The notes: a model not told the origin generated them from the letters alone. A DNA stretch of 47,845 nucleotides from Octopus sinensis (GCF_006345805.1 NW_021828070.1:1-47845), one strand, 5' to 3'; numbered from the stretch's first letter, positions 7,860 to 44,911 are shown. Made by a program: numbers and translations.

Positions 7860-8018
7860 CATACAACTATTACACCACCACCGCCCCCACTACTATTACT
7901 ATTAATCATCATCATCATCACCATCATCATCACCACAACCACCGCCGCCGTCGCCACAGCCGCCACAACCACCATCATCATCATCATCAACATCCTCATC
8001 ATCATCGTCATCATTATA

Positions 8019-8067
<49 letters not shown>

Positions 8068-8077
8068 GTTATTGTTA

Positions 8078-8115
<38 letters not shown>

Positions 8116-8149
8116 GTTATTATTATTATTATTGTTATTATTATTATTA

Positions 8150-8183
<34 letters not shown>

Positions 8184-8198
8184 GTTATTATATTATTA

Positions 8199-8258
<60 letters not shown>

Positions 8259-8278
8259 CATCATCATCATCATCATTC
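7860..8278. repeat. (ATC)n/(TAT)n/(CAT)n trinucleotide tract
   Basis: Directly visible. It lies immediately upstream of the 5' end of decayed Tx1-like copy A. Confidence 0.95.
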
Positions 8279-8568
8279 TAATTACTATGATGGCTGTTAG
8301 CCGGACAAGCCACGCTTGACATCGGCTCTATAAATTTTGTTTACAAACTATGCTGTTTACGTTGGGAAGAGTTGTTTTTCGTTTCAGTTTTTTTGTTTAA
8401 TTGTGAAGAAGAAATGACGTGCTATCTGCTGGTGAGTTGCTTTTTTTTTTTTTGTTTAAAGTCCCCCATTTCTCGTGGGACTTGCTGATATAAATTTTAT
8501 ATCGATTGGAAAATTTGTGCTTTTCATCAATTTTGTTGATGGAGTCAGTCGTGTTTGAGAAGTACATA

Positions 8569-8608
<40 letters not shown>

Positions 8609-8699
8609 TAGTTGGCAGAGCGTAACAATGATGTTATGAAGGAGGGTGAGGGTGGGGCGAGATTAGTAGCGTTACTACTGCGTCAGTGACATCTGACTG

Positions 8700-9550
8700 C
8701 AAAGCAGACAACAGCAGCAGCAGTAGCAGCAACAGCAGCAGCAGTAGCAGCAACAGCAGCAGCAGTAGCAGCAACAGCAGCAGCAGTAGCAGCAGCGACA
8801 ACAGCAGCATATACAGCAGCAACAACGGCAACTGCATAAATAACTTCCAGCAGCAGAAGCATCAGCAGCATCATCAGCATCATCATCAGCAGCGACAATA
8901 ACACCAAGAGCAAGAACGGAAGAACAAACAGCAGCTTCGAGAGCGTGATATCCACCAGCAGCAGCAGCAGCCGTTTCAGTAGCAGCAGCAGCAAAAACTA
9001 CAGTAATAAAATCAACAAGAAAAAGTCCCCCCCCCTCCCAGAAGAATAACAGTATCAACAAAGACAGCAGCAAACTGCAACAGCAACAACAGCAACAGCT
9101 GAAAGCGATAGTAACAACAACAGCGACATCTGCACAAAACTGCGGCCACAATAATGACAACACCAACCGCATCAAAGAGACTACCAACACTACCACCGCC
9201 GCCACCACCACCACCAAAACAGGCAAGGACAACACCAAGAACAAGAGCAACAACAACAACAACAACAGCAACGGCATCAATAGCAACAACAGCAACAACT
9301 GTGAAAAATGACAACAATAGCAAAAACAACTGTATCAGAGACAGAACCACAACCACCATAACAACATCACCACCACTACCACCACCTCCACAAGTAACAA
9401 CAGAAACAACAACAACAACAACAACAGCTACAACAACATCACCACCTCCACCTCCACAAATAACAACAACAACAACAACAACAGCAACAAAAACAACAAC
9501 AGCACCACCACCACAACTACCACCAGTAACAGAACAACCACATCAATAGC
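8700..9550 (+). repeat. (AGC)n/(AAC)n/(ACC)n compound trinucleotide tract, probably the low-complexity ORF1 N-terminus of copy A
   Basis: Visible repeats. Position after the 5' UTR matches the T/N/S-rich ORF1 N-terminus of copy B. Contains stops. Confidence 0.7.
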
Positions 9551-9642
9551 AGAAGCAAGAACAAAAATGACGGCGACGCCAAATTAAGTGATGGAGGACA
9601 ATCTACGAGTGAACAATCGCGTTGTGGTAACAAAATCAAACG

Positions 9643-9955
9643 GGCGAGCTGGCAGAACGTTAGCAAGCCGGACGAAATGCTTAGCAGTATTTCGTCTGCC
9701 GTTACGTTCTGAGTTCAAATTCCGCCGAGGTCAACTTTGCCTTTCATCCTTTCGGGGTCGATTAAATAAGTATCAATTACGCACTGTGGTCGATAGAATC
9801 GACTTAATCCGTTTGTCTATCCTTGTTTGTCCTCTCTGTGTTTAGCCCCTTGTGGGTAGTAAAGAAATAGGTATTTTGTCTGTCTACGATCTGGGTTCAA
9901 ATTCCGCCGATGTCGACTATGCCTTCCATCCTTTCGGGGTCGATAAATTAAGTAC
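9643..9955 (+). mobile_element. SINE A1 plus head-less second unit (9869-9955)
   Basis: Complete monomer to AAAGAAATAG (9868), then restarts at GTATTTTGTCT. Confidence 0.88.
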
Positions 9956-9956
9956 T

Positions 9957-10100
9957 AGTGCGTAACTGGTACTTATTTAATCGACCCCGAAAAGATGAAA
10001 AGCAAAGTCGACCTCGGCGGAATTTGAACTCAGAACGTAACGGCAGACGAAATACGGCTACACATTTCGCCCGGCGTGCTAACGATTCTGCCAGCTCGCC
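9957..10100 (-). mobile_element. SINE A, 3'-truncated, inverted relative to 9643-9955
   Basis: Reverse complement of head and body: ...TTCTGCCAGCTCGCC. Confidence 0.88.
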
Positions 10101-14775: not shown

Positions 14776-14814
14776 CCCCTGCATGTATGTGTAGTAATAT
14801 GTATGATATATATT

Positions 14815-15105
14815 GGCGCAGGAGGGGCTGTGTGGTAAGAAGCTTGCTTCCCAATCATATGTTTCTGTGTTCAGTCCCACTGCGTGGCACATTGGGCAAG
14901 TGTCTTCTACAACAGTCTCGGGCCGACGTGAGCCTTGTAAGTGGATTTGGTAGACGAAAACTGAAAGAAGCCCATCGTATACATACATATATGTATGTGT
15001 GTGTTTGTGTGTGTATATACGTATTTGCATGTTTGTGTTCGTCCCCTCCACACCAACCATCATCGTTTGACCACACATCATTTGGTGTGTTTACGTCCCT
15101 GTAGC
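14815..15105 (+). mobile_element. SINE family C (GGCGCAGGAGTGGCTGTGTGGTAAG head, CORE-like TTGGGCAAGTGTCTT, internal (TG)n)
   Basis: Homologous to 35405-35828 and 39228-39636. Confidence 0.85.
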
Positions 15106-15120
15106 ATAGATAGATAGATA

Positions 15121-15419
15121 TGTTTGTTCCTTCTCGAGCCATGCCTAACTCACAAGGGCCGGTTTCCCGGTTTCTTGGCGTATAGGTTCCCCACCTGAAT
15201 GGGACGCCGGTCCGTCGCAGGTGAGCAGCCAGATGCAGGAGGAAAGAGTAAGAGAAAGTGTGGGGCGAAGAGTCAGCAGTAGTTCGCATTACCTTCTGCC
15301 AGAGTCGCTGATCTTAGGTGTTTTCGCTCATAAACCACACATCGTCCGGTCTGAGATGTGAACCCGCGATCCCTCGACCGCGAGTCCGCTGCTCTAACCA
15401 CTAGGCCATGTGCCTCCAC
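15121..15419 (-). mobile_element. tRNA(Arg)-like-headed SINE family B, tail variant 1
   Basis: Head GTGGAGGCACATGGCCTAGTGGTTAGAGCAGCGGACTCGCGG shared with 40493-40873, 41088-41491 and 46847-47145. Confidence 0.85.

Positions 15420-15420
<1 letters not shown>

Positions 15421-15500
<80 letters not shown>
15421..15500. repeat. (GATA)20 at the 3' junction of Tx1-like copy B
   Basis: Perfect 80-bp tract. Confidence 0.98.
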
Positions 15501-15501
<1 letters not shown>

Positions 15502-15794
15502 CTTTTTATTGTAGCCACACAGGGCTAAACACAGAATAAAATGGACGAAATACAATGTAGAATTTTTTCTTTTCGAGGTGGGATGGGTGGGGCAAAAAAA
15601 AAAAAAAAAAAACCTTTGATCAATAGGGATCTGTGGGTTGTGTGGTGTATAAAAAAGCAATATATATATATATATAAAGGTTCACAGTTTAGGTGTAGCC
15701 TTGGAAAGAAAAACCTACAAAAAGACCAAGGTCACCTCAGACAGTTCGAAAAGAACACATGAGTAAGTCGCCTTACTTCTCGTTGTCTCTTTGG

Positions 15795-18700
15795 TTACAG
15801 ATTTATGCTTAAAATAGTGTCGTCTTTCATACTGACCATTTTTGCCACTTTTACCCACTTTTTATTAAAACATTCGTTCGACAAAGCCTTCCTCTCTATT
15901 CTCATCCTCCTTTTCAAGTGGTACTTGAAAAAGTTGACGAGAGACTGACCAGAGAGGAAGGTGTTTGTTTGCAGTCCTTTCAAACGCGTCCACCACACAC
16001 ATTCTTTCGCCATAGCCATCAGCGTAACGAAAACCGTTTTCCTTCCCGTTTAAAGGAAGGTGGTGGAACAATATTCACGATAGACTCGGCCGATAGGCGA
16101 GCCTGACCTACACGTGACAACAGCTGTTCGACGAAGGACCACAGCTCTGAAATATCTGGACACTGCACGAGTGCGTGCAGAACGGTTTCGTCGCTCTGAC
16201 CGCATCTCGGGCAGGTCGGTCCGGTGATGGTTTTCGAACCGTGTCTGTAGCTCTTCTCTCGAACAGGTAGTGCGTCTCGATAGCACTGCCAAGCCAGGGA
16301 TTTCTGGAAGTTATCCATAGGCCCCGGCCCGAACGTCGTCCTGAACAGGCGGGTTAGGAATTCCTCGTCGACGCCCAGGTTTGCCCCGAGTGTGTCGTCG
16401 GACCTCCCCTCCACTAGTCCTCTATAGAACGCTTTAGTCGTTTGGAAGTTGCACAAGTTTGACCCCGTCGGCAGAGCTGCTGTAGAGCTTGGCGACACTC
16501 TCGGTGCCAATCGCCCAGTTTCGGTCTCTTTTTGATCCACGTTTGCAGTTCGGTCAGTGAGACGAGCTGCGGGAAGTCGCGCCTCACAAACGGCGCCCAC
16601 ACCTGTTCACCGTCGTCGATGAATTTCCAGAGATGTCGCAGTCTCAGCGCATGCCTGCGCATCATCAACCACGGCATGCCCAGTCCTCCATTCAACGGAT
16701 GTTGACAGCAAATGGACTTCCTCACCATCGGAACGCCACCCTTCCACAGGAAGCGGAAGAGTATGCGTTCCAGTTTGGTGATGGTGGCGTCGGGACAAGG
16801 TACGACGGTCAGGCGGTAATCGATGACGGATGCGATGTACGCGTTCGCCACCTCCGCCCGGCCTTTTAGAGACAGCTTTCTCTCGGCCCATGTTTGGCTG
16901 AGAGCGACCACTCTACTCGTGATCTCGTCCCAGTTCTTATCCATTTGGAGGTCCGGACTGAACCAGACCCCGAGCAATTTAACCGGTCCGTCCGTCCAGC
17001 GTCCCACTACTGAGCCGCAGTCGGACGGCATGGGCTTGCTTCTCCAGGTGCCGAGTAGCAAACCCACTGACTTTTCCGGGTTAATCTTTGCTCCCGTCAC
17101 CGTTTCATATTTTCTTAGTGTCTCGCCGACCATTCGATGTGCTGGTAGCTCGACACTATGACGGTGACATCGTCCGCATATGCCGACACGCTCGTCCCGC
17201 AACCCAGTTCCCGTGGGATGCCCCTCAGTGTCGCCAGCTTCCGCAGTAGCGGCTCGAGAGTCAATACATACAGAAGCGCCGACAGGGGACACCCCTGACG
17301 GACCGAACGCGTGATGTCAAACGGTTTCGACAGGTGACCGTTCACCCGAATCACCGATCGGATGCCGCTATACAAGGCAGCGATCCAACCGCGGAAGACG
17401 GGACCGAAGCCAGCCGCCCTGAGGACGGCCGCCAAGTACCGATGGTCGACCCTATCGAAGGCTTTAGACTGATCCAAATTTATCAGCGCCCCACCCATGC
17501 CAGGATCCTTAACTACCCTGTCCACAATGTAGCGCATCAGATGGAGGTTGTCATGTATGGTTCTGCCCGGCACGGCGCATGTTTGCGCCCTGTCGACCAG
17601 TTTACCAATGACAAGCGCCAACCTCTCGGCTATTACTTTGGCCAAAATTTTCAAATCTGCGTTGAGCAGAGTGATGGGCCTGAAATTATCTATAAAATTC
17701 CCCTTGTTTGAGTCTTTCTTCAGCAACGTCACTGCACCTCGGCTCACGAAACCGGGGATTCTCCCGTTTTGTTGCCAGTTGCAGTAGACTGATGCCAAGA
17801 GGTCGCCAAACAAGTCTGGCATTCGACAATACAGCTCGTAGGGTAAACCATCCAATCCAGGCGACTTATCCCTCGCGCAGCCCGCCATCGCATCCCACGT
17901 CAGCGGCTGTGATGGGACTTTCACAACACTCCGCCTCTCTTGCCGAGAGCCGCGGCAGGTCGGTCAGGTAGGCACTGAAATCCATCCCTCGTTCCGACCC
18001 ACCACTCGCACCAAACAGTCGAGCAAAGTGCTGTTGAAAGGCCTCACACATCCTTTCGGGTTCGAGTAAACTGCATCCCTGTTGATCTATTAGAGACCGA
18101 ATGGTTGATCTGTTGCCACGCTGCGCCTCCGCTACCCGGGCCTCTCGCGCAGCTTCAATCCCTTCGTTCCTTAAGGCACGCATTTTAGCTCTGACGACGC
18201 AACCTTCGTGCTTGGCGTTGAGGTGTTGGTCGAGGGCCATCCTCGCAGCTAGCACGTTGGTTGCGCTGCCAGTGGTAAGTGCCTCTTCTAGTTTCTTAAC
18301 TAAGTCTCCCTCTACTCTATTTCGTTCTATCGCTAATTCCTTGCTAAACCTAATTGATTCCGATTTTATTGCCATTTTCAGGGCGTACCACCAGCGGTTG
18401 TTAACGACCGCTCCCGTCAGCGCCCTCTTAATTAACTCGCTAATCCGGTTCCTGTAAACCTGTCGCGCTAACAGCGACGTGTTCAGTTTCCAGTAACCGG
18501 GACCCTGCCTATGTGTTTTATCTAAGTCGAGCGTACACGTAACAAATTTGTGATCTGTGTAGCTGACTATTTTAAATTGTGGACATCCTACACTATCCCT
18601 ATCCGCTGTCCTGCATAGAATTCTATCTAGATAAGATCTCGACGATCCGACGCGGTTTGTCCAAGTCCACGTTGGCACGTTCGGATGGTCGAGTCGGAAC

Positions 18701-19239
18701 CTGTCAGACAAATGGAAACGTCTGAGCAGGTCTTTGAGGCTCTTACACCCCCTTCTATTCCTATCCCTTCCCACATAATCTAGATGCGTGTCCAAGGTAG
18801 CGTTCCAATCCCCTACTAACAGTAAAGGTCTAGACGTACCCAGGAAAACCTCTAGACGTCTGAAGAAATCCGCCCGACCCGTTAAGGACGGTGCATAAAC
18901 TGCCATCAGACGGAATGCACACCCATTTCTGCCATCCACGTCCAAGACAACCAGCCTACCCTCCGGGTCTAGGAATATTGCTCTTACTTTTACCTTTAGA
19001 CTCTTTCGAAAAAGCACCGCAGTACCTCCACCACCCATGTTCGGCAGACAGGGAGAAAAATAAATGTCAAATTGATTGCCAAACATGGACTCGAGGGCCC
19101 GCGGCTTACTGAGTCTGGTTTCACTGATAGCTACTATATCCACGTCCAGTGACTTGATGTCGTTTAGAAGGTAACCTTGCTTCCAAGCCGACGCCAAGCC
19201 ACGCGCATTCACACAACCTAATTTAAGCATACTTGACAT
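15795..19239 (-). CDS. ORF2 polyprotein (APE endonuclease, reverse transcriptase, C-terminal Cys/His finger), ~1149 aa after restoring 5 missing bases at 4 frameshifts
   Basis: APE motifs: NARG, SETRL, VYAP, GDWN, YLDRI, TDH. RT motifs: SPGLDG, NFRPITLLNADLKILAK, DQSKAFD, RQGCPLS, YADD. Finger: CPRC..ETVLHALVQC. Frameshifts near 17895, 17132, 16467 and 16036; no in-frame stops. Confidence 0.93.
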
Positions 19240-19440
19240 TTACGAAAATTGTGTTTTACACACTATATTAGAAGAGACAAGAGGCAAGAAGTGAGGTCAC
19301 TTACTCATTTTAAAAGTTTCATTTTTTCTTCTTCTTTTGTATCGTTTTGATGAGGTGTTTGTATAGTTTTTTCGACAGGTATCGTTGATACCCGCCTACC
19401 GCATTCGGAATAATGTTTTCAGTATGTGGTGTTGCTTGTG

Positions 19441-21118
19441 TTATGTGTAAAATTCTGATGTGTTTCGGTGGTGTGGTGTGCGGATGATTGTTTGTCTTAA
19501 ATCATCTTCACAGACGACCATGTTAGATTTGATGTAGTCCATTAATTCTTTATTGTCTGTGTCTATTGCAGTTAGTTGTGTGTGTGGTTTTACGGGTTCA
19601 TTACTTTTTTGATTGTCTAGGGGAATGTTGTCCTGAGTGAGATATCTCCCTGCTTTAATTCCTTGTTTGGTGGATTTTTTGGATCTTTTTTTTTTACCCC
19701 CTGTGGCTATTTGCCATTCCGTCGAACTTTCGTCGTCCGACGGTATCAGTATGGGGTAGAGGAAAAGAACAGGATCACTATGTATGCTTGTATAAATTGT
19801 TGATGTTTTGTGCGGTGTTTGTGTTGTTGTGGTGTTAGGGGTAGCATTTGTCTTCTCGTCAGTGTTTTCTGTCTTTTTAATTGTCGTCCTGGGTGTGGGT
19901 GTGGGTCGATTTTTTGAAGATTCAACAAGTTTAATTGGTTGTGACGTCAACGGTGATTGTGTTGGTACTGTTTTTCTTGGTGATGTTGTTGGTTTGGTTG
20001 TTTTTCTTGGCGTTGTTCCATAATTGAGTGTGTTGGTGTTGGTGTTGGCAACAAAGGGATTTTATTTGTTTTCTGAATTGTTCTTTCTTGTTTTTTCTGT
20101 ACCAGATCGCACTTGGCAATCAAATGTTCGGGGCTGCCACATTTGTAGCATCTAGGCTTTTTGCCTTCTGCCATAACATATAGGCATTGCCCATTCTCCA
20201 AGTATATCTTGTCGGGTAGGCTCTCGATAGAGGCCCCCTCAATCTGGATGGTCAACACTACTGTTTTTCCACCCCAATTGTCGTTTAGGTACACGGCTGT
20301 TTCTAGAATATTGATCTTTTTCAAGTGGTAACAGATTGCCCCTGTTATCCATTTGTTCGGCATATCGGGGGGTACATTTCTGATAGTAATTCTACTCACC
20401 CTCTGGTTTTTATAATAAGGGACCATGATGATTTCATCATTTCCCAGAGACTCAGTAGAGTGAGCTTTTGCCACTTCCTGGTTAGGGAAGCGGACCACTA
20501 CTGTGTTAAACTGGGGACCCCAGTTTATATACTCTTTTTCTTTCATTATGTTTTTTAAACATTTCTCCACATCAGTTTTTGTAATCTGTTCATTTGGTTT
20601 TTTGTTTTTTCTAATAATTTTATATACAATTGTCTTATTTTCTATTTCTTGTTTTATATGTTGAGGTGTATGCAGGACTAAATCTTGTCCACGGGTTGTA
20701 AAGAGAGCTCTTGTTTCTATGAGCTCTTCATTTGTGAATGTAACAATCTCCTTTTTCTGGCGAAGAATATCTGCGAAATTTACTGTTGTTGACTTTTTTG
20801 TATTGGCATCTTCACTATTAGATAGTTCATTTTTATTGTTGTTCTTGTTGTTGCTGTTGTTTTTGTCAATAGTTTTCGTTTCAGTTTTATTTTTATCATT
20901 TATGTTGGTCGTGGTAGTGGTGGTGGTGGTGGTGGAGGTGGTGGTGGTAGCAGTTGTTGTCTCGTGGTTGCTGTTGTTAGTGGTGGTGGTGGCGGTGGTG
21001 ACAGGGCTGTTAACGCACGTGGTTGCAGCGTTCCTTTCACCGAATTTCACGTTGGCATTTTCCGTGCGAACGTTCTTTTTTTCTCTGTCGTTTCCAGACT
21101 AGGAAAATTTTGTTCCAT
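19441..21118 (-). CDS. ORF1 gag-like protein (T/N-rich N-terminus, RRM-like middle, CCHC knuckle, T/P/K-rich C-terminus), ~559 aa after two 1-bp restorations
   Basis: CYKCGSPEHLIAKC knuckle. Probable ATG at 21118 (MEQNFPSL). Frameshifts in the A-run at 21076-21082 and near 20031. The RRM-like label is inference. Confidence 0.85.
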
Positions 21119-21361
21119 AAAAGAACGCGACCAGCGTTCAACAATAAAAGAAATTTCTAGACATTTTCTAATGTCGAGAAGAATACAGAAATGAAATGGG
21201 GGGTCGAAACTGCCCCTAGGGGCGAATTCCTCCCTTGGAAAAGCACTCAAATGAAAGTTGGTTGCCTTCACACCTTATTTGCAAAAATCTACACAAAATT
21301 GGCCTATAAATAGTCAAAATAAATGATTACCTTCGGAGCTGAAACGACATCACATCCGTCA

Positions 21362-21386
21362 ATAGATAGATAGATAGATAGAATAG

Positions 21387-21468
<82 letters not shown>

Positions 21469-21484
21469 GATAGATAGATAGATA
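21362..21484. repeat. Imperfect (GATA)n between copies B and C
   Basis: About 30 units with a few interruptions. Confidence 0.97.
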
Positions 21485-23633
21485 CTTTCTTTTATAGCCA
21501 CACAGGGCTGAATACAGAGGGGACAAATACAAATGCAGAGCTTTTCTTTTCGAGGGTGGAAAAAAATAAAAATGTAAGATTGCGATCAAAAGGGATCGAG
21601 AGGAGGAAAAAAGGAAAAAAAGAAAATCGTGTATCACAGAAATAATGGTGTAAACATTGATATAACAAGATTGGGTTCATCCGTGGAAGAAAAGCCTACA
21701 GAAAAGACCACGGGAACCCCAGTCAGGGAGGAAATAACACATGAGGTCAAAAATGCTCTCTTTCTTTCTTTTTACGATTTACAGGATCATGCTCAAAATG
21801 GTTTCGTTACTAGCACGCACCATCTTTGCAACATTCACCCATCTTTTTTTGAATCTTTCGCGAGACAAAACTTCCCTCTCCATTCTCACCTTCCTTTTCA
21901 AGTGGTACTTGAAAAAGTTGATGAGCGATTGGCCAGAGAGGTAAGTGTTTGTCTCTAATCCTTTCGCTCGAGTCCACCACACACATTCTTTCACCATGGC
22001 CACCAGTACGATGAAAACTGCCTTGCCTTCCGGTTGAGGGAAGGGGGCGGAGCAATTCTCACGATAGACTCGGCCGATAGGCGGATTCGTCCCACACGTG
22101 ACAGCAGCCGTACGGCATAAGCCACAGGTCGGAAATGGTTGGGCATTGCACGAGTGCGTGCAGAACGGTTTCGTCGCTCTGACCGCATCTCGGGCAAGTC
22201 GGTCCAGTGTGTCTGGAACCGTGTCTGTAGAGCTTATCCCGAACAGGTAATGCTTCTCGATAGCACTGCCAGGCCAGGATCTTTGGTGATTGTTCATAGG
22301 TCCCGGCCCGAAAGTTGTCCTGAACAGGCGGGTCAGTGTTCCTCGTCGACGCCCAGACTCTGCCCGAGTTCGTCGTCGCACCTCCCCTCACTAATCCTCT
22401 ATAGAATGCCTTTGTTGTGATGGAGTCGCACAAGTTCGATCCCGGACGGCAGAGTTGCTTGAGAGCAACGCGACACTCGCGGTGCCATTCGCCTAGCTCG
22501 GTCTCTGCTTGATCCATGACTGTAGTTCGTCCAAGGAGACGAGCTGCGGGAAAGCGCGCCGCACAAAAGGCGACCACCCCTGTTCACCGTTGTCTATGAA
22601 GCGCCGGAGATGTCGCAGTCTCAGCGCATGTCTGCGCATCATCAACCACGGCATGCCCAGCCCTCCATTTAGCGGGTGTTGGCAGCAAATGGATCGTCTA
22701 ACCATCGGAACGTTTCCCTTCCACAAGAAGCGGAAGAGTATGCGTTCCAGTTTGGTGATGGTAGGGTCGGGACAAGGCACGACGGTCAGACGATACTCGA
22801 TGACGGATACGATGTGTACGCGTTCGCCACCTCCGCCCGACCTTTTAGGGATAGCTTTCTCTCAGTCCATTTCTGGTGAGAGTAGCCACCCTAGTCGTTA
22901 TCTCGCCCCAGTTCTTCTCCATTTGGAGGTCCGGACCGAACCAGACCCCGAGCAATTTAACCGGTCCGTCCGTCCAGCGTCCCACGATGGAGACGCTGTT
23001 GGACGGCATGGGCTTGCTTCTCCAGGTGCCGAGCCGCAAGCCCACTGACTTTTCCCGGTTAATTTTTGCTCCCGTTACCGCTTCGTATTCTTTCAGTGTC
23101 TCGCCGACCAGCTCGATGTGCTCGTAGCTCGACACTATGACGGTGACGTCATCCGCGTATGCAGACACGCTCCTCCCGCATCCCAGCTCTCGTGGGATGC
23201 CCCTCAGCGTCGCCAGTTTCCGCAGTAGTAGTGACTCAAGAGTCAGTACATACAGCAGCGATGAGAGGGGGCATCCCTGACGAACCGAACGCATGATGTT
23301 AAAAGGTCTGGATAGATGACCATTTACGCGAACTACTGAGCGGATGCCGCTGTATAAGGCAGCGATCCAACCGCGGAAAACTGGACCGAAACAGCCGCTT
23401 TGAGGACAGCCTCCAAGTAGTGATGGTCTACCCTATCGAAGGCTTTTGATTGATCCCAATTGATCAGCGCCCCACCCATGCCAGGATTTTTAACTACCCT
23501 GTCTATGATGTAGCGCATCAGATGGAGGTTGTCATGAATACTTCTACCCGGCACGGCGCATGTTTGCGCCTTGTCGATTAGTTTCTTGATGACAAGCGCC
23601 AACCTCTCGGCTAACACCTTGGCCAAAATTTTC

Positions 23634-23636
<3 letters not shown>
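21485..23636 (-). mobile_element. 5'-truncated Tx1-like copy C (RT to 3' end), frameshifted
   Basis: Begins at LKILAK directly after (TATC)n. Contains DQSKAFD, RQGCPLS, YADD and CPRC finger. Same 3' terminus as copy B. Confidence 0.93.

Positions 23637-23724
<88 letters not shown>
23637..23724. repeat. (GATA)22 at the 5' truncation junction of copy C
   Basis: Perfect tract abutting RT-coding sequence. Confidence 0.98.
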
Positions 23725-23725
<1 letters not shown>

Positions 23726-26282: not shown

Positions 26283-26510
26283 TGGAGGTGTATGGCTTAG
26301 TGGTTAGTGGTTTTGGACTCATGATCGATTCCTAACTGGTCGACGCATTGTGTTCTTGAGCAAAACACTTCATTTCGCGTTCCTCCGATCCATTCAGCTG
26401 GCAAAAATGACTAATCCAGCAACGGATCAGCGTCCGTCCATGTGGGGAACATATACGCCTTTGAAAACGTGAAACTGGCCCACATGAGCCTGGCATGGCT
26501 TGAGAAGGAA
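26283..26510 (+). mobile_element. CORE-type SINE with the same tail as 15121-15210
   Basis: TGGAGG..TGGCTTAGTGGTTAG head, TTCTTGAGCAAAACACTT core, tail CATGAGCCTGGCATGGCTTGAGAAGGAA. Confidence 0.7.
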
Positions 26511-26813: not shown

Positions 26814-27223
26814 GAGCTGGCAGAAACGTTAGCACTCCGGTCGAAATGCTTTGCGGTATTTCGTCTGCCGTTACGTTCTTAGTTCAAATTCCACCGAGCT
26901 CGACTTTGCCTTTCATCCTTTCAGGGTCGATTAAATAAGTACCAGTTACACACTGGGGTCGATATAATCGACTTAATCCGTTTGTCTGTCCTTGTTTGTC
27001 CTCTCTGTGTTTAGCCCCTTGTGGGTAGTAAAGAAATAGGTATTTCGTCTATCTTTACGTTCTGAGTTCAAATTCCGCCGAGCTCGACTTTGCCTTTCAT
27101 CCTTTCGGGGTCGATTAAATAAGTACCAGTTACGCACTGGGGCCGATATAATCGACTTAATCCGTTTGTCTATCCTTGTTTGTCCTCTCTGTGTTTAGCC
27201 CCTTGTGGGTAGTAAAGAAATAT
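26814..27223 (+). mobile_element. Dimeric SINE A1 (full unit plus head-less unit), inserted into a decayed family C fragment
   Basis: A single 15-bp TSD GTACTGAACCTTAGA (26801-26815, 27224-27238) brackets both units. Confidence 0.9.
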
Positions 27224-27544
27224 GTACTGAACCTTAGACCTCGTTGTTGGAATGCAATATTCTTACCACATTGCTATTTTTCTGAAAATATATCTCAATT
27301 TCTTTGTCTATTTTTTTTATTTATCTCTTTCAACCTCCCACCCTTATTTTCCTTCTTAATCGTTCATATTTTTTTTTTACATCATTCACTTACATATAAA
27401 CCCTTGTTTCTCATTCCTTCTCTTCAAGTTTATATATCTAATCTCTCAGTATTTCTTCTCCCAAATTCGCAACATCTTCAAAAGTTCCTCCCTAATCTTC
27501 ATCATAATTTTCCCTTGCTTCATTTCATAAATACGACTTCTCTT

Positions 27545-31839: not shown

Positions 31840-32016
31840 CTGCGGCACTGAGAGTATTCGATGATGTAGACTAGTTCTTCTTCTTAAGTTTACGCTGTCC
31901 ATGTTCAGAGAGTGGGAATGGATTCGTGCAAACCCTTTCCCCACAATAAAAAAAATCATCATACACAAGCAGAAAGTAAGACTTATTACAAAAATGGCTG
32001 GTCGTAGCCTTCGCAT
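31840..32016 (-). CDS. Candidate first coding exon of a secreted or type II membrane protein (59 aa)
   Basis: MRRLRPAIFVISLTFCLCMMIFFIVGKGFARIHSHSLNMDSVNLRRRTSLHHRILSVPQ: basic N-terminus plus a 19-aa hydrophobic stretch. Ends at a weak phase-0 donor CAG|GTTTTC. No downstream exons identified. Confidence 0.4.
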
Positions 32017-32070
32017 GCATGAAAATTTCGATCAGGCGATGGCAATACGCGAACACGAGTTTGTAGCAAT

Positions 32071-32103
<33 letters not shown>

Positions 32104-32209
32104 GTGTATGTATGTATGCATGTATGTATGTGTGCATGTATTCATTCATGTGTATGTATGTATGTATGTATGTATGTATGTATGTATATATGTATGTATG
32201 TATGTATGT

Positions 32210-32539
32210 ATGGCTCAGTGGTTGGAGCTTCGGGTTGACAACCATGAGGTAGTGAGTTCGATTTCCGAACGTGGCTATGTGTTGTATTCTTGAGCAAGGC
32301 GCTTTATTTCACATTGCTCAAGTTCGCTCAGTTGAAGAAATGAGTTGTGACGTCACTAGTGCCAAACTGTGTCGGCCTATGCCTTTCCCTTGGATAACTT
32401 CAGTGGCATGGAGAGTGGAGGATGGTATGCATGGGCGACTACTGGTCTTCTATAATAATCTTGCCCGGACTTGTGCCTCGGAGGGTAACATTCTGGGTAC
32501 AATCTCATGGCGAGTCATGCCCGAAAGAGGTCTTTACCC
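32210..32539 (+). mobile_element. CORE-type SINE family D (duplicated at 33423-33750)
   Basis: ATGGCTCAGTGGTT head, TTCTTGAGCAAGGCGCTTTATTTCAC core. Homologous to 44356-44911. Confidence 0.8.
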
Positions 32540-32572
32540 ACCTGTGTTTTCAATATTTATATATATTTATAA

Positions 32573-32799
32573 GCGGTGAGCTGGCAGAAACGTTAGCACG
32601 CCAGGCGAAATGCGTAGTCGTATTTCGTCTGCCGTTACGTTCTGAGGTCGACTTTGCCTTTCATCCTTTCGGGGTCGATAAATTAAGTACCAGTTACGCC
32701 CTGGGGTCGATATAATTGGTATTTCATTTCTCTTTATGTTCTGAGTTGAAATTCCGCCGAGGTTGACTTTGCCTTGTGCCTAGAGTAGAAAAGAATATT
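32573..32799 (+). mobile_element. SINE A with partial second unit and A2 tail (duplicated at 33784-34009)
   Basis: GAGCTGGCAGAAACGTTAGC head; ends CCTTGTGCCTAGAGTAGAAAAGAAT. Confidence 0.82.
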
Positions 32800-34221
32800 T
32801 GTATTCTCTTCTTTGTTTGCCGAGGTTCAATTCACACTCCAGATCTTAATATTTTCTTCTCCAAATCAAACTTTTGATTTTTACCCCCAAAAAAACGCTC
32901 TCTTTCATCATGCAGTCACATTTTTCATTAACAAAAAACAAAAACAACACGTCTGAAAAAGCTATAGTGAAATTTAAAACAGTTATGTTCTGTCTGTATG
33001 TATGTGTGTGTTTTATGTGTGTATATATATATATATATATATTTGTATACTCGAGAGAAAACCTGCGGCACTGAGAGTATTCGATGATGTAGACTAGTTC
33101 TTCTTCTTAAGTTTACGCTGTCCATGTTCAGAGAGTGGGAATGGATTCGTGCAACCCTTTCCCACAAATAAAAAAAATCATCATACACAAGCAGAAAGTA
33201 GATGATTACAAAATGGCTGGTCGTAGCCTTCGCATGCATGAAAATTCGATCAGGCGATGGCAATACGCGAACACGAGTTTGTAGCATCACACACACACAC
33301 ACACACACATTATATATGTGTATGTATGTATGCATGTATGTATGTGTGCATGTATTCATTCATGTGTATGTATGTATGTATGTATGTATGTATGTATGTA
33401 TATATGTTGTATGTATGTATGTATGGCTCAGTGGTTGGAGCTTCGGGTTGACAACCATGAGGTAGTGAGTTCGATTTCCGAACGTGGCTATGTGTTGTAT
33501 CTTGAGCAAGGCGCTTTATTTCACATTGCTCAAGTTCGCTCAGTTGAAGAAATGAGTTGTGACGTCACTAGTGCCAAACTGTGTCGGCCTATGCCTTTCC
33601 CTTGGATAACTTCAGTGGCATGAGAGTGGAGGATGGTATGCATGGGCGACTACTGGTCTTCTATAATAATCTTGCCCGGACTTGTGCCTCGGAGGGTAAC
33701 ATTCTGGGTACAATCTCATGGCGAGTCATGCCCGAAAGAGGTCTTTACCCACCTGTGTTTTCAATATTTATATATATTTATAAGCGGTGAGCTGGCAGAA
33801 ACGTTAGCCACGCCAGGCGAAATGCGTAGTCGTATTTCGTCTGCCGTTACGTTCTGAGGTCGAACTTTGCCTTTCATCCTTTCGGGGTCGATAAAATAAG
33901 TACCAGTTACGCCCTGGGGTCGATATAATTGGTATTCATTTCTCTTTATGTTCTGAGTTGAATTCGCCGAGGTTGACTTTGCCTTGTGCCTAGAGTAGAA
34001 AAGAATATTTGTATTCTCTTCTTTGTTTGCGAGGTTCAATTCACACTCCAGATCTTAATATTTTCTTCTCCAAATCAAACTTTTGATTTTTACCCCCAAA
34101 AAAACGCTCTCTTTCATCATGCAGTCACATTTTTCATTAACAAAAAACAAAAACAACACGTCTGAAAAAGCTATAGTGAAATTTAAAACAGTTATGTTCT
34201 GTCTGTATGTATGTGTGTGTT

Positions 34222-34252
<31 letters not shown>

Positions 34253-34446
34253 TGATAATATGATATAACGCAGGAATTATCGATATGTTAATATTCAATT
34301 AATATTCCATCAATATGCTAATATTCAATTAACTTTTGAAATCTAGAAACACCTGTTACTTTTACATTTTGAAAAAGAAAAAAGATCAAAATAAATGTAA
34401 ACATGGTTGTGAGGTAAGGAGCTTGCTTCACAACAAAAGGCATTGA

Positions 34447-34659: not shown

Positions 34660-34660
<1 letters not shown>
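34447..34660 (+). mobile_element. SINE A2 subfamily followed by (TTA)n
   Basis: A-type head and body; tail TTTCAGGTCTTGTGCCGATAATAGAAAGGA. Confidence 0.82.
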
Positions 34661-39080
<4,420 letters not shown>

Positions 39081-39120
<40 letters not shown>

Positions 39121-39125
39121 TATAA

Positions 39126-39207
<82 letters not shown>
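39081..39207. repeat. (TAT)n at the 3' junction of copy D
   Basis: Directly visible. Confidence 0.96.
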
Positions 39208-39695: not shown

Positions 39696-39918
39696 CTATA
39701 TATATATGTGTGTGTGTTTGTTGTGCGTGTGTGTATGTATATATATGTATTTATATGTAATGTTATGTATATACATATCTATCTATCTATCTATCTATCT
39801 ACTATCTATCTATCTATCCTATCTGTCCTGTCTTCTGTCTGTCTATCTATCTATCTATCTATCTTCTATCTATCTATCTATCTATCTATCTATATATCTA
39901 TATATCTATATCTATCTA

Positions 39919-39972
<54 letters not shown>

Positions 39973-44355: not shown

Positions 44356-44911
44356 GGCGCATGGTTAGAGTGTTGGGCTCACAATCATGAGGTAGCACGT
44401 TCAGTTCCCAGACAGTGTTGTATGTTGTGTTCTTGAGCAAGGCACTTTATTTCACGTTGCTCCTGCTCACTCAGCTGTAGAAATGAGTTGTGATGTCACT
44501 GATGCCAAGCTCATCGGTCTTTGCTTTTTCCTTGGATAACATTGGTGGTGTGGAAGGTGGTAAGCTGGCAGAAACGTTAGCATGCCAGGTGAAATGCATA
44601 GCAGTATTTCATCTGTCTTTTATGTTCTGCGTTCAAATTCCGCCAAAGTCGACTTTGCCTTTCACCCTTTTGGGGTTGATAAATTAAGTACCATTTGCAT
44701 ACTGGGGTCGATGTAATTGACTGCCTCCCTCCCCAAAAATTTCAGGCCTTGTGCCTTGAGTAGAAAAGAATATTGGTGGTTTGGAGAGGGGAGATTGGCA
44801 TGCATGGGAGACTGGTCTTTCATAAACAACCTTGCCCAGACTTGTGCCTCAGAGAGGAACTTTCTAGGTGCAATCCCATGATCATTGATGACCAAAGAGG
44901 GTCTTAACCCT
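44356..44911 (+). mobile_element. SINE family D with nested SINE A2 (44557-44772)
   Basis: D sequence resumes after the insert. TSD TTGGTGGT(G/T)TGGA at 44542-44554 and 44773-44785. Confidence 0.85.

What the first reader, a model, noticed from the sequence alone, without database searches (positions are those of the whole stretch)
15421..23724. (GATA)n-targeted Tx1-like retrotransposon forming a head-to-tail array inside a microsatellite
Seen: (GATA)20 | copy B | (GATA)~30 | copy C | (GATA)22, both copies in the same orientation. Both 3' ends join in the same register (AAAG[T]|TATCTATC). Copy C is 5'-truncated in mid-RT (LKILAK), yet its 5' junction is also pure (TATC)n. The sequence beyond 23724 is not an element 3' UTR, so that tract cannot be a self-made tail. 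Established: Tx1-clade APE elements include sequence-specific families in fish (Kibi on (TC)n, Koshi on (TTC)n, Keno on U2 snDNA, Mutsu on 5S rDNA, Dewa on tRNA spacers). Inference: this is a tetranucleotide-specific family in a mollusc. I do not recall one being described, but I could not check.
Basis: partly seen in the sequence, partly recalled or inferred. Interest (0 to 1): 0.88.

Follow-up and report, generated by a model that had tools for sequence, protein, structure and literature searches.

The report
LINE copies nested in GATA microsatellite
Two decayed copies of an L1/Tx1-type jumping gene and a small SINE sit head-to-tail inside a single (GATA)n repeat, which points to a retrotransposon family that lands preferentially in that repeat: a new example of a known lifestyle, not a new kind of element.

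Summary
On the minus strand the order is (TATC)22, copy C, (TATC)~30, copy B, (TATC)20. I add a tRNA-headed SINE in the same orientation, followed by (TATC)3.5.

Copy C is 2,151 bp and 5'-truncated at ORF2 residue 530. Copy B is 5,861 bp and full length. B and C are 83% identical, so they are separate insertions and not a duplication. B encodes ORF1 with a CCHC knuckle. Its ORF2 has an APE endonuclease, a reverse transcriptase and a C-terminal zf-RVT finger, broken by four frameshifts. The best solved-structure match is human L1 ORF2p.

A sister family in the window (D, E) is flanked by (ATT)n in the same way. More distant relatives lack microsatellites but form perfect head-to-tail arrays.

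Preferential insertion into the family's own repeat is the best reading. The cause could be endonuclease specificity or pairing of the RNA tail with the target; I could not separate these. No other genomic copies were reachable, so the genome-wide test was not run. Tx1-clade membership was not tested directly.

Tetranucleotide-targeting Tx1 families are already published for crocodilians, (TTCC)n and (TTTC)n. This is therefore a new member of a known kind.

The parts
23636..23724 (-). (TATC)22, read as (GATA)22 on the + strand. This is the 5'-flanking repeat of copy C and abuts unique DNA at 23725.
21485..23635 (-). Copy C: 5'-truncated LINE of 2,151 bp. It starts at ORF2 residue 530 (LKILAK, in the RT), has several frameshifts, and ends ...GCCCTGTGTGGCTATAAAAGAAAG.
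21362..21484 (-). (TATC)~30 with three interruptions, lying between the 3' end of C and the 5' end of B.
15501..21361 (-). Copy B: full-length LINE of 5,861 bp. Its 5' terminus is homologous to those of D and E.
19950..21098 (-). ORF1 of B: 383-codon open frame with a low-complexity N-terminus and a single CCHC zinc knuckle. No early ATG in this frame; a probable frameshift in an A-run near 21100.
   Evidence: Weak homology to ORF1 of relatives, E=1e-8.
15798..19239 (-). ORF2 of B, about 1,150 codons in five frame segments (four frameshifts). APE about 18520-19239, RT about 16900-17714, zf-RVT CCHC finger about 16138-16303.
   Evidence: Pfam Exo_endo_phos 2e-17, RVT_1 4e-26, zf-RVT 1e-6. Human L1 ORF2p 8e-58. 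APE residues aligned to L1-EN catalytic positions retained.
15513..15526 (-). 3'-terminal hairpin AGCC-CTGTGT-GGCT of B, 12 nt before the 3' end. The same sequence in C lies at 21496-21509.
   Evidence: Shared with the 3' end of the abundant SINE.
15420..15500 (-). (TATC)20 between the 3' end of B and the 5' end of the SINE.
15121..15419 (-). tRNA-headed SINE of 299 bp, same orientation as B and C. It has (TATC)n on both sides.
15106..15120 (-). (TATC)3.5, the 3' flank of the SINE and the end of the array. It abuts a truncated, oppositely oriented SINE.
34897..39080 (+). Copy D: sister LINE family, about 41% amino-acid identity to B in the APE-RT region. It has an internal RT deletion and a SINE inserted at about 35400-35820. 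It is flanked by (ATT)79 (34660-34896) and (ATT)42 (39081-39207).
8284..9640 (+). Fragment E: 5' UTR and ORF1 N-terminus of a D-like LINE. Its 5' terminus is homologous to that of D. It lies directly downstream of (ATT)83(ATC)6 at 8013-8283.

Best explanation
B and C belong to an L1/Tx1-group LINE family that has no poly(A) tail. Its transcripts end in a short GC-rich hairpin, a dozen A-rich bases, and (UAUC)n.

Proposed mechanism:
- The ORF2 protein (APE plus RT) nicks the (GATA)n strand of a pre-existing (GATA)n/(TATC)n tract.
- The freed ...GATA-3'OH pairs with the (UAUC)n end of the RNA and primes reverse transcription.
- The second junction also falls within the tract.

Each insertion therefore leaves the repeat on both of its sides and renews the landing pad. 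Later insertions then stack head-to-tail in one orientation. Here those are C (5'-truncated), B (full length) and a SINE.

Shown: the anatomy, the independence of the copies, the protein domains, and the cognate repeat on both sides of every copy.

Inferred: the nick site, the pairing step, the order of insertions, and that the preference holds genome-wide.
For: (1) 3 of 3 insertions at this locus have (TATC)n on both sides and share one orientation.
(2) The 5' flank of the 5'-truncated copy C is (TATC)22 followed by unique DNA. That tract is therefore not the tail of an upstream element.
(3) B and C are 83% identical, so they came from separate events.
(4) The SINE is tRNA-headed (so probably pol III-transcribed from an internal promoter) and should not carry upstream repeat in its RNA, yet it has (TATC)20 on its 5' side.
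(5) Sister family D/E shows the same pattern with a different repeat. D has (ATT)79 and (ATT)42 on its two sides. E has (ATT)83 upstream. Both start at homologous 5' termini.
(6) More distant relatives (38-45% identity) have no microsatellite. Even so, 4 of 5 loci examined are perfect head-to-tail arrays. The one solo copy has a 10-15 bp target-site duplication with a 5-nt match (AGCAG) between the element's 3' end and the target. This suggests that homology to the 3' end guides priming across the lineage.
(7) The APE residues that align with the catalytic positions of L1-EN (as I recall them) are conserved.
(8) Microsatellite-targeting Tx1 families are an established category (PMC4494074, PMC3812793).
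Against: - All B/C evidence comes from one locus, so the three insertions are not independent samples of the genome.
- No other genomic copy of the family could be retrieved. The closest relative sits on a 3-kb contig without flanks.
- An abundant SINE shares about 45 nt of the B/C 3' end and has at least 8 copies in the window, but it has no (TATC)n tail or flanks. Machinery recognising that 3' module therefore does not always go to GATA.
- The second copy of the 3' part of the (TATC)-flanked SINE (26416-26510) is not in a GATA tract.
- Both LINE copies are decayed, so nothing shows current activity.
Confidence: 0.62

Rival explanations
1. The repeat is a self-made tail and the endonuclease has no sequence specificity. 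On this view (TATC)n is the element's own 3' tail, copied or slipped from the RNA as in eel UnaL2, CR1 or the I factor. The endonuclease nicks loosely. Copies end up in existing (TATC)n tracts only because the RNA tail primes best where it can base-pair. The apparent target specificity is then guidance by the RNA tail, and most (GATA)n tracts in the genome would be old tails.
For: - Within one lineage the flanking repeat changes with the family: (TATC)n for B/C, (ATT)n for D/E, none but the element's own 3' end for relatives. Changing an RNA tail is easier than re-engineering an endonuclease.
- 5-nt microhomology at the solo relative's insertion site.
- D lies in the (ATT)n tail of an upstream SINE.
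Against: The (TATC)22 tract 5' of copy C is next to unique DNA with no element 3' end, so at least one tract was not a recognisable tail. Sequence-specific nicking is, from memory (not checked here), the published mechanism for Tx1L, R1Bm and TRAS1.
Confidence: 0.25
2. One event or recombination produced the array, not repeated targeting. Either a single reverse-transcription event copied the B RNA and then jumped onto the tail of a C RNA, giving a concatemer. Or unequal or ectopic recombination between (TATC)n tails of elements from elsewhere joined them.
For: Relatives form arrays whose units are 99-99.9% identical with no spacer. That fits concatemer formation or unequal crossing-over. Microsatellites are also substrates for recombination.
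Against: - B and C differ by 17%, so they come from different source elements.
- A third, unrelated element (the SINE) is also in the tract in the same orientation.
- The outer flanks are still (TATC)n on both sides, so a repeat target is needed in any case.
Confidence: 0.08
3. Passive accumulation. The elements insert at random and merely survive better in repeat-rich, low-recombination DNA, as proposed for Waldo-A/B near (CA)n in Drosophila (PMC3812793).
For: The window is extremely rich in microsatellites (72 TRF rows, many overlapping). At least 13 copies of one SINE lie in 48 kb.
Against: - All six junctions of B, C and the SINE lie directly in the repeat.
- Orientation is uniform.
- The 3' junctions share one register.
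- The GATA strand makes up only 0.59% of the window.
Confidence: 0.04

Closest known systems
Kibi, (TC)n, and Koshi, (TTC)n: Tx1-clade LINEs of teleost fish (Kojima and Fujiwara 2004, as cited in PMC4494074 and PMC3812793)
   Same: APE-type LINE of the L1/Tx1 group with the target microsatellite on both sides of copies, including truncated ones.
   Different: The repeat unit is GATA/TATC, not TC or TTC. The host is an invertebrate, probably a cephalopod. Relationship to these families by RT phylogeny was not tested.
Crocodilian Tx1 families preferring (TTCC)n or (TTTC)n: Tx1-1_Crp, Tx1-2_AMi and others (PMC4494074)
   Same: Preference for a tetranucleotide microsatellite in L1/Tx1-group elements. 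This removes the 'first tetranucleotide-specific family' claim.
   Different: Different motif, which here is not a pyrimidine/purine-strand repeat, and a different host. Those families were called by a genome-wide criterion of more than 20% of flanks, which could not be applied here.
Waldo, (ACAY)n, and Mino, (AC)n: R1-clade LINEs of insects (PMC3812793)
   Same: APE-type LINEs inserted sequence-specifically in microsatellites, including a 4-bp unit.
   Different: A different clade. No R1Bm or TRAS1 endonuclease appeared among the PDB matches listed at E<=0.01; the top matches were all human L1-EN.
Dong, (TAA)n: R4 clade, encodes a restriction-like endonuclease
   Same: Same target repeat as sister family D/E, since (ATT)n is (TAA)n on the other strand. 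Dong-R4 is reported as abundant in Octopus vulgaris (PMC13282606).
   Different: D has an APE-type ORF2 related to B, not a restriction-like endonuclease. It would be convergent use of the same repeat.
Zepp of Chlorella, an L1-group LINE (Higashiyama 1997; recalled from memory, named only in PMC5203782)
   Same: 5'-truncated copies insert into the 3' tail of earlier copies and build nested head-to-tail arrays in one orientation.
   Different: Zepp uses poly(A). Here the tail and landing pad is (TATC)n. In the relatives it is the bare 3' end of the element.
Stringent-type LINE/SINE pairs with repeat tails, such as eel UnaL2/UnaSINE1 with (TGTAA)n (from memory)
   Same: A 3' hairpin followed by a short-repeat tail. 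A SINE shares the LINE 3' end.
   Different: Those elements are not reported to have the repeat on their 5' side.

Membership tests
L1-group (L1/Tx1) APE-type non-LTR retrotransposon | ORF2 with an N-terminal APE endonuclease, a central RT and a C-terminal cysteine-histidine motif, in that order | tested here: met
   Pfam Exo_endo_phos 2e-17, RVT_1 4e-26, zf-RVT 1e-6. The alignment to human L1 ORF2p is collinear over residues 7-875, E=8e-58. The finger reads C-x2-C-x8-H-x4-C.
L1-group (L1/Tx1) APE-type non-LTR retrotransposon | APE catalytic residues present | tested here: met
   The alignment to L1-EN keeps the residues that I recall as the equivalents of N14, E43, Y115, D145/N147, D205 and D229/H230.
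L1-group (L1/Tx1) APE-type non-LTR retrotransposon | 5' truncation of copies with intact 3' ends | tested here: met
   Copy C starts at ORF2 residue 530 and shares its 3' end with B.
Tx1 clade (Repbase sense) | RT domain groups with Tx1L, Keno, Kibi and other reference elements in a phylogeny | not testable with these tools
   No named Tx1 reference sequence was returned by three protein searches or a cluster look-up. Indirect support only: in molluscs and octopus the L1-group LINEs are annotated as L1-Tx1 (PMC10294476, PMC13282606).
Tx1 clade (Repbase sense) | Type-I ORF1 (RRM and/or CCHC knuckle, no Transposase_22) | tested here: inconclusive
   One CCHC knuckle at 19.4-19.5 bits, just under Pfam's cut-off of 20.8. 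It is above cut-off in two relatives (22.1 and 24.3 bits). No Transposase_22 and no RRM were detected. This is consistent with Tx1-type ORF1 as described in PMC5203782.
Microsatellite-specific LINE (Kibi/Koshi type) | The same microsatellite on both the 5' and 3' sides of copies, including 5'-truncated ones | tested here: met
   B, C and the SINE are 3 of 3. Sister family D is met on both sides and E on its 5' side. All B/C data come from one locus.
Microsatellite-specific LINE (Kibi/Koshi type) | The preference holds across the genome (criterion in PMC4494074: more than 20% of flanks) | not testable with these tools
   The host genome is not in any searchable collection. Searches found no further copies.
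Microsatellite-specific LINE (Kibi/Koshi type) | The endonuclease cleaves the target repeat specifically | not testable with these tools
   This needs a biochemical assay.
LINE with a self-made repeat tail that inserts at unrelated sites (UnaL2, CR1 or I type) | 5' flanks unrelated to the tail repeat, with ordinary target-site duplications | tested here: not met
   All 5' flanks are the cognate repeat and no target-site duplication is visible beyond it.

The most novel reading that the evidence does not exclude
In this LINE lineage the target may be chosen mainly by base pairing between the last bases of the RNA and the nicked DNA, so that changing the tail re-aims the element. The window and its relatives would then show three settings of one mechanism: (UAUC)n goes to (GATA)n tracts, (AUU)n goes to (TAA)n tracts, and no repeat tail goes to the 3' end of an existing copy, giving spacer-less tandem arrays. 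That would be a naturally re-targetable, RNA-guided safe-haven strategy, and SINEs could borrow it by swapping tails.
Probability: 0.2. Interest if true: 0.7.

Novelty: new member of a known kind. Interest (0 to 1): 0.4.

Why it matters
Target-specific LINEs are studied for two reasons. They show how selfish DNA avoids damaging its host, and they are starting points for site-directed gene insertion.

A (GATA)n-preferring family would add a new motif and a new phylum to the short list of microsatellite-targeting APE LINEs. The more useful point is the comparison inside one lineage. Close families are tied to (TATC)n, to (ATT)n, or to their own 3' end. This offers a natural experiment on whether the endonuclease or the RNA tail sets the target.

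It also bears on the origin and spread of microsatellites in this genome, in which SINEs and LINEs are very abundant.

Tried and rejected
- Three protein searches found one close relative only: P0001, 71% identity, on a 3-kb contig without flanks. They returned no named Tx1 or L1 references. The third search repeated the first at a looser threshold and added only four weak hits.
- The cluster look-up gave no useful names.
- An exact look-up of the window's own 457-residue ORF found nothing on record.
- A metagenome scan for the B/C 3' end followed by (TATC)3 gave 0 hits.
- Rfam and tRNA scans gave no hits. The SINE heads are too diverged from tRNA.
- MAFFT alignments of the 3' hairpins were not structurally consistent. 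I did not run a formal covariation count. The stem comparison is by eye only: AGCC/GGCT in B and C, AGGC/GCCT in relatives and one SINE, GCCC/GGGT in the abundant SINE, TGGC/GCCA in L002.
- Rejected: assembly or segmental duplication, because B and C differ by 17%.
- Rejected: R1-clade membership, because no R1Bm or TRAS1 endonuclease appeared among the PDB matches at E<=0.01 and the ORF2 alignment to L1 is collinear.
- Rejected: the upstream (TATC)22 as the tail of another copy, because its flank is unique.
- Rejected: microsatellite association as a property of the whole lineage, because the P0002-like relatives have none.
Full report
WHAT IS THERE. Tandem Repeats Finder reports three GATA tracts: 15420-15500 (20.2 units, 100% pure), 21362-21484 (30.8 units, 93% matches) and 23636-23724 (22.2 units, 100% pure). 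Reading the minus strand gives this order:
- unique DNA
- (TATC)22
- copy C (23635-21485, 2,151 bp)
- (TATC)~30
- copy B (21361-15501, 5,861 bp)
- (TATC)20

Both copies end with the same 14-mer, GCCCTGTGTGGCTA, followed by 10-12 A-rich bases. Both then enter the repeat in the TATC register (AAAAAGT|TATC in B, AGAAAG|TATC in C). That 14-mer occurs only at these two places in the window. Copy C begins at TTTGAAAATTTTGGCC, which encodes LKILAK. This is residue 530 of the conceptual ORF2 of B (tblastn). B and C are 83.1% identical over 1,980 bp. They are therefore products of different source elements and not a duplication or an assembly repeat.

A THIRD INSERTION IN THE SAME TRACT. Directly after (TATC)20 comes a 299-bp SINE with a tRNA-like head (15419-15121), in the same orientation. 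It ends ...GGAACAAACA and is followed by (TATC)3.5 (15120-15106). Unrelated sequence, a truncated SINE in the opposite orientation, follows. The tract therefore received at least three insertions, all in one orientation. GATA-strand tracts cover 0.59% of the window, all of it in this array. Three random hits in that fraction have a probability of about 2e-7, and uniform orientation adds a factor of one quarter. The figure is rough, because the tracts were measured after the insertions.

WHAT THE ELEMENT IS. B has two reading frames.
- ORF1 is a 383-codon open stretch at 21098-19950. It has a low-complexity N-terminus and a single CCHC knuckle at 19.4-19.5 bits, just under Pfam's cut-off. The knuckle scores above cut-off in two relatives. 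There is no Transposase_22.
- ORF2 (19239-15798) is broken into five frame segments by four frameshifts.
- ORF2 carries Exo_endo_phos (2e-17), RVT_1 (4e-26) and a C-terminal zf-RVT finger that reads C-x2-C-x8-H-x4-C (1e-6).

I stitched ORF2 with X at each shift. Its best solved-structure match is human L1 ORF2p, E=8e-58, collinear over residues 7-875. R2 proteins score far lower. The APE domain aligns to L1-EN with all the positions I recall as catalytic kept. No R1Bm or TRAS1 endonuclease appeared among the matches at E<=0.01. B is therefore a decayed, full-length member of the L1/Tx1 group.

I could not place it in the Tx1 clade by phylogeny, because none of the searches returned a named Tx1 reference. 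Three things are consistent with Tx1:
- the CCHC-type ORF1 (PMC5203782);
- the lack of a poly(A) tail;
- published annotation, in which L1-group LINEs of molluscs and octopus are classed as L1-Tx1 (PMC10294476, PMC13282606, PMC8967140).
None of these proves it.

A SISTER FAMILY WITH A DIFFERENT REPEAT. The window holds a second, related family on the plus strand. Copy D (34897-39080) has an ORF1 fragment and an ORF2 with about 41% amino-acid identity to B in the APE-RT region. It has an internal RT deletion and a SINE inserted in it. D ends ...GCCCGGATGTAAAATAAATGAAACT and is followed by (ATT)42. Its 5' end directly follows (ATT)79, which is itself the tail of an upstream SINE ending ...GCCGATAATAGAAAGG. 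Fragment E (8284 to about 9640) has a 5' terminus homologous to that of D, and less clearly to that of B. E lies just downstream of (ATT)83(ATC)6. In a neighbour-joining tree D groups with B and P0001, apart from all other hits. Two families of one lineage are thus each bracketed by their own repeat.

MORE DISTANT RELATIVES. The only close database relative is P0001 (71% identity). It sits on a 3-kb contig of assembly GCA_024449705.1 that ends inside the element, so it gives no flank information.

The next group has 38-45% identity and comes from ENA assemblies ERZ21867824 and ERZ25071366. It is the sister clade in the tree. These elements have no microsatellite flanks. Even so, four of the five loci I fetched are perfect head-to-tail tandem arrays. 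The units are 99-99.9% identical and abut directly (L002, L005, L006/L007, L008/L009). The one solo copy (L004) has a 10-15 bp target-site duplication. The last five bases of the element (AGCAG) are also present at the target. This suggests, from a single example, that priming in this lineage uses homology between the RNA 3' end and the nicked DNA.

SHARED 3' MODULE WITH SINES. The last 45 nt or so of B and C (...TCTGTGTTTAGCCCTGTGTGGCTA...) match the 3' end of the most abundant SINE in the window (...TCTGTGTTTAGCCCCTTGTGGGTAGTAAAGAAATAG). That SINE has 8 copies with this end and at least 13 bodies. Another SINE subfamily (near 44,632-44,760) ends ...CCCCAAAAATTTCAGGCCTTGTGCCTTGAG.... This matches the 3' hairpin region of the distant relatives at 88-94% over 32 nt.

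All of these ends contain a 4-5 bp GC-rich stem around a CTTGT or CTGTGT loop. The arms differ but stay complementary:
- AGCC/GGCT in B and C
- AGGC/GCCT in relatives and one SINE
- GCCC/GGGT in the abundant SINE
- TGGC/GCCA in L002
I read this by eye. MAFFT alignments were not structurally consistent, so no formal covariation count was made. I take the hairpin to be the likely recognition site for the reverse transcriptase. This is an inference.

The abundant SINE has no (TATC)n tail or flanks. Carrying this 3' module is therefore not sufficient for going to GATA.

HOW IT MOST LIKELY WORKS. Every B/C-type insertion seen has (TATC)n on both sides, including the 5'-truncated LINE copy and the SINE, whose RNA should start at its tRNA-like head. 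The simplest account is preferential insertion into existing (GATA)n/(TATC)n tracts.

The geometry requires the first nick to be in the GATA strand. The plus strand reads ...GATAGATA|ACTTTTT at B, ...GATA|CTTTCTT at C and ...GATA|TGTTTGT at the SINE. Reverse transcription was therefore primed from a ...GATA-3' end in all three cases. If the RNA carries some (UAUC)n, the register follows automatically from pairing, so the shared register does not by itself prove a precise nick.

Each insertion regenerates the repeat on both sides. This explains the stacking.

Two mechanisms remain open. One is an endonuclease that reads GATA, as is known (from memory; not checked here) for Tx1L, R1Bm and TRAS1. 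The other is guidance by the RNA tail. The second is supported by the change of repeat between sister families, by the arrays of relatives at their own 3' ends, by the microhomology at L004, and by published correlations for RTE-related elements (PMC6007223). I put 0.62 on preferential insertion into the tract, whatever reads it. Within the alternatives, I put 0.25 on the reading that the tail alone, and not the endonuclease, does the aiming.

WHAT IS KNOWN. Published microsatellite-targeting APE LINEs include the following:
- Kibi, (TC)n, and Koshi, (TTC)n, in fish;
- crocodilian Tx1 families preferring (TTCC)n or (TTTC)n (PMC4494074);
- R1-clade Waldo, (ACAY)n, and Mino, (AC)n (PMC3812793).
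Dong, of the R4 clade, targets (TAA)n (PMC3812793). Togen, a fish lineage related to the NeSL clade, targets (TG)n (PMC4640811). L1-Tx1 families are catalogued in octopus genomes, including 13 recently active families in O. vulgaris, without any target analysis (PMC13282606).

Seven full-text searches found no LINE described as (GATA)n-specific. Repbase and Dfam could not be searched. The finding is therefore a new member of a known kind, with a new motif and probably a new phylum. It is not the first tetranucleotide-specific family.

LIMITS. All evidence for B/C targeting comes from one locus in one 48-kb window. Both LINE copies are inactive relics.

Noticed in passing
window 34660-39207 (+) and 8013-9640 (+): A sister LINE family (copies D and E) is bracketed by (ATT)n in the way B and C are bracketed by (TATC)n. 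D lies in the (ATT)n tail of an upstream SINE. D and E share a 5' terminus.
   Followed up: yes
window 896, 7297, 9844, 10559, 12220, 27013, 27197, 44199 (3' ends); 13 SINE bodies listed: A very abundant tRNA-derived SINE shares its last 45 nt or so, including a hairpin, with LINE B/C. It has no microsatellite tail. It is probably mobilised by a related LINE.
   Followed up: partly
window 9640-9990 and 26815-27226: At two loci a 5'-truncated unit of that SINE (starting GTATTTYGTC) is fused exactly to the 3' end (...AAAGAAATAG) of a full unit. This is either a dimeric subfamily or repeated insertion at a copy's 3' end. The first locus runs on into an inverted copy.
   Followed up: no
window about 44560-44760; L004 9106-9137; L005 3680-3711: A SINE subfamily's 3' tail (CCCCAAAAATTTCAGGCCTTGTGCCTTGAG) matches the 3' hairpin region of LINEs from an unrelated ENA assembly at 88-94% over 32 nt, although those LINEs are only about 40% identical to B in protein. 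This is a deeply conserved 3' module.
   Followed up: partly
L002/L003 (ERZ25071366 ctg14421c); L005, L006/L007, L008/L009 (ERZ21867824): Relatives of the LINE form spacer-less head-to-tail tandem arrays with periods of about 6.4-6.8 kb and units 99-99.9% identical. Two of the contigs carry the 'c' suffix, which I take to be the assembler's circular flag; the tandem repeat probably explains it. The source organism is unknown.
   Followed up: partly
window 14801-15105 (+); compare 35400-35820: The SINE abutting the end of the array is cut off at ...CCCTGTAGC, where the full copy at 35400-35820 continues and, about 25 nt further on, reads ...GACCGATAGAATAAGTACT.... That internal GATAGA motif might have seeded the (GATA)n tract. 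The missing part of the SINE is not on the other side of the array.
   Followed up: no
window about 31900-34400: A tandem duplication of about 1.21 kb. It contains exact 187- and 193-nt repeats spaced 1,209-1,211 bp apart, and each copy carries a (TGTA)n tract and a SINE head.
   Followed up: partly
window 39776-39920 (+): The only other TATC/GATA tract in the window. It is impure, lies on the opposite strand relative to the array, and has no LINE or SINE 3' end next to it. At least one such tract therefore exists without a recognisable element.
   Followed up: partly
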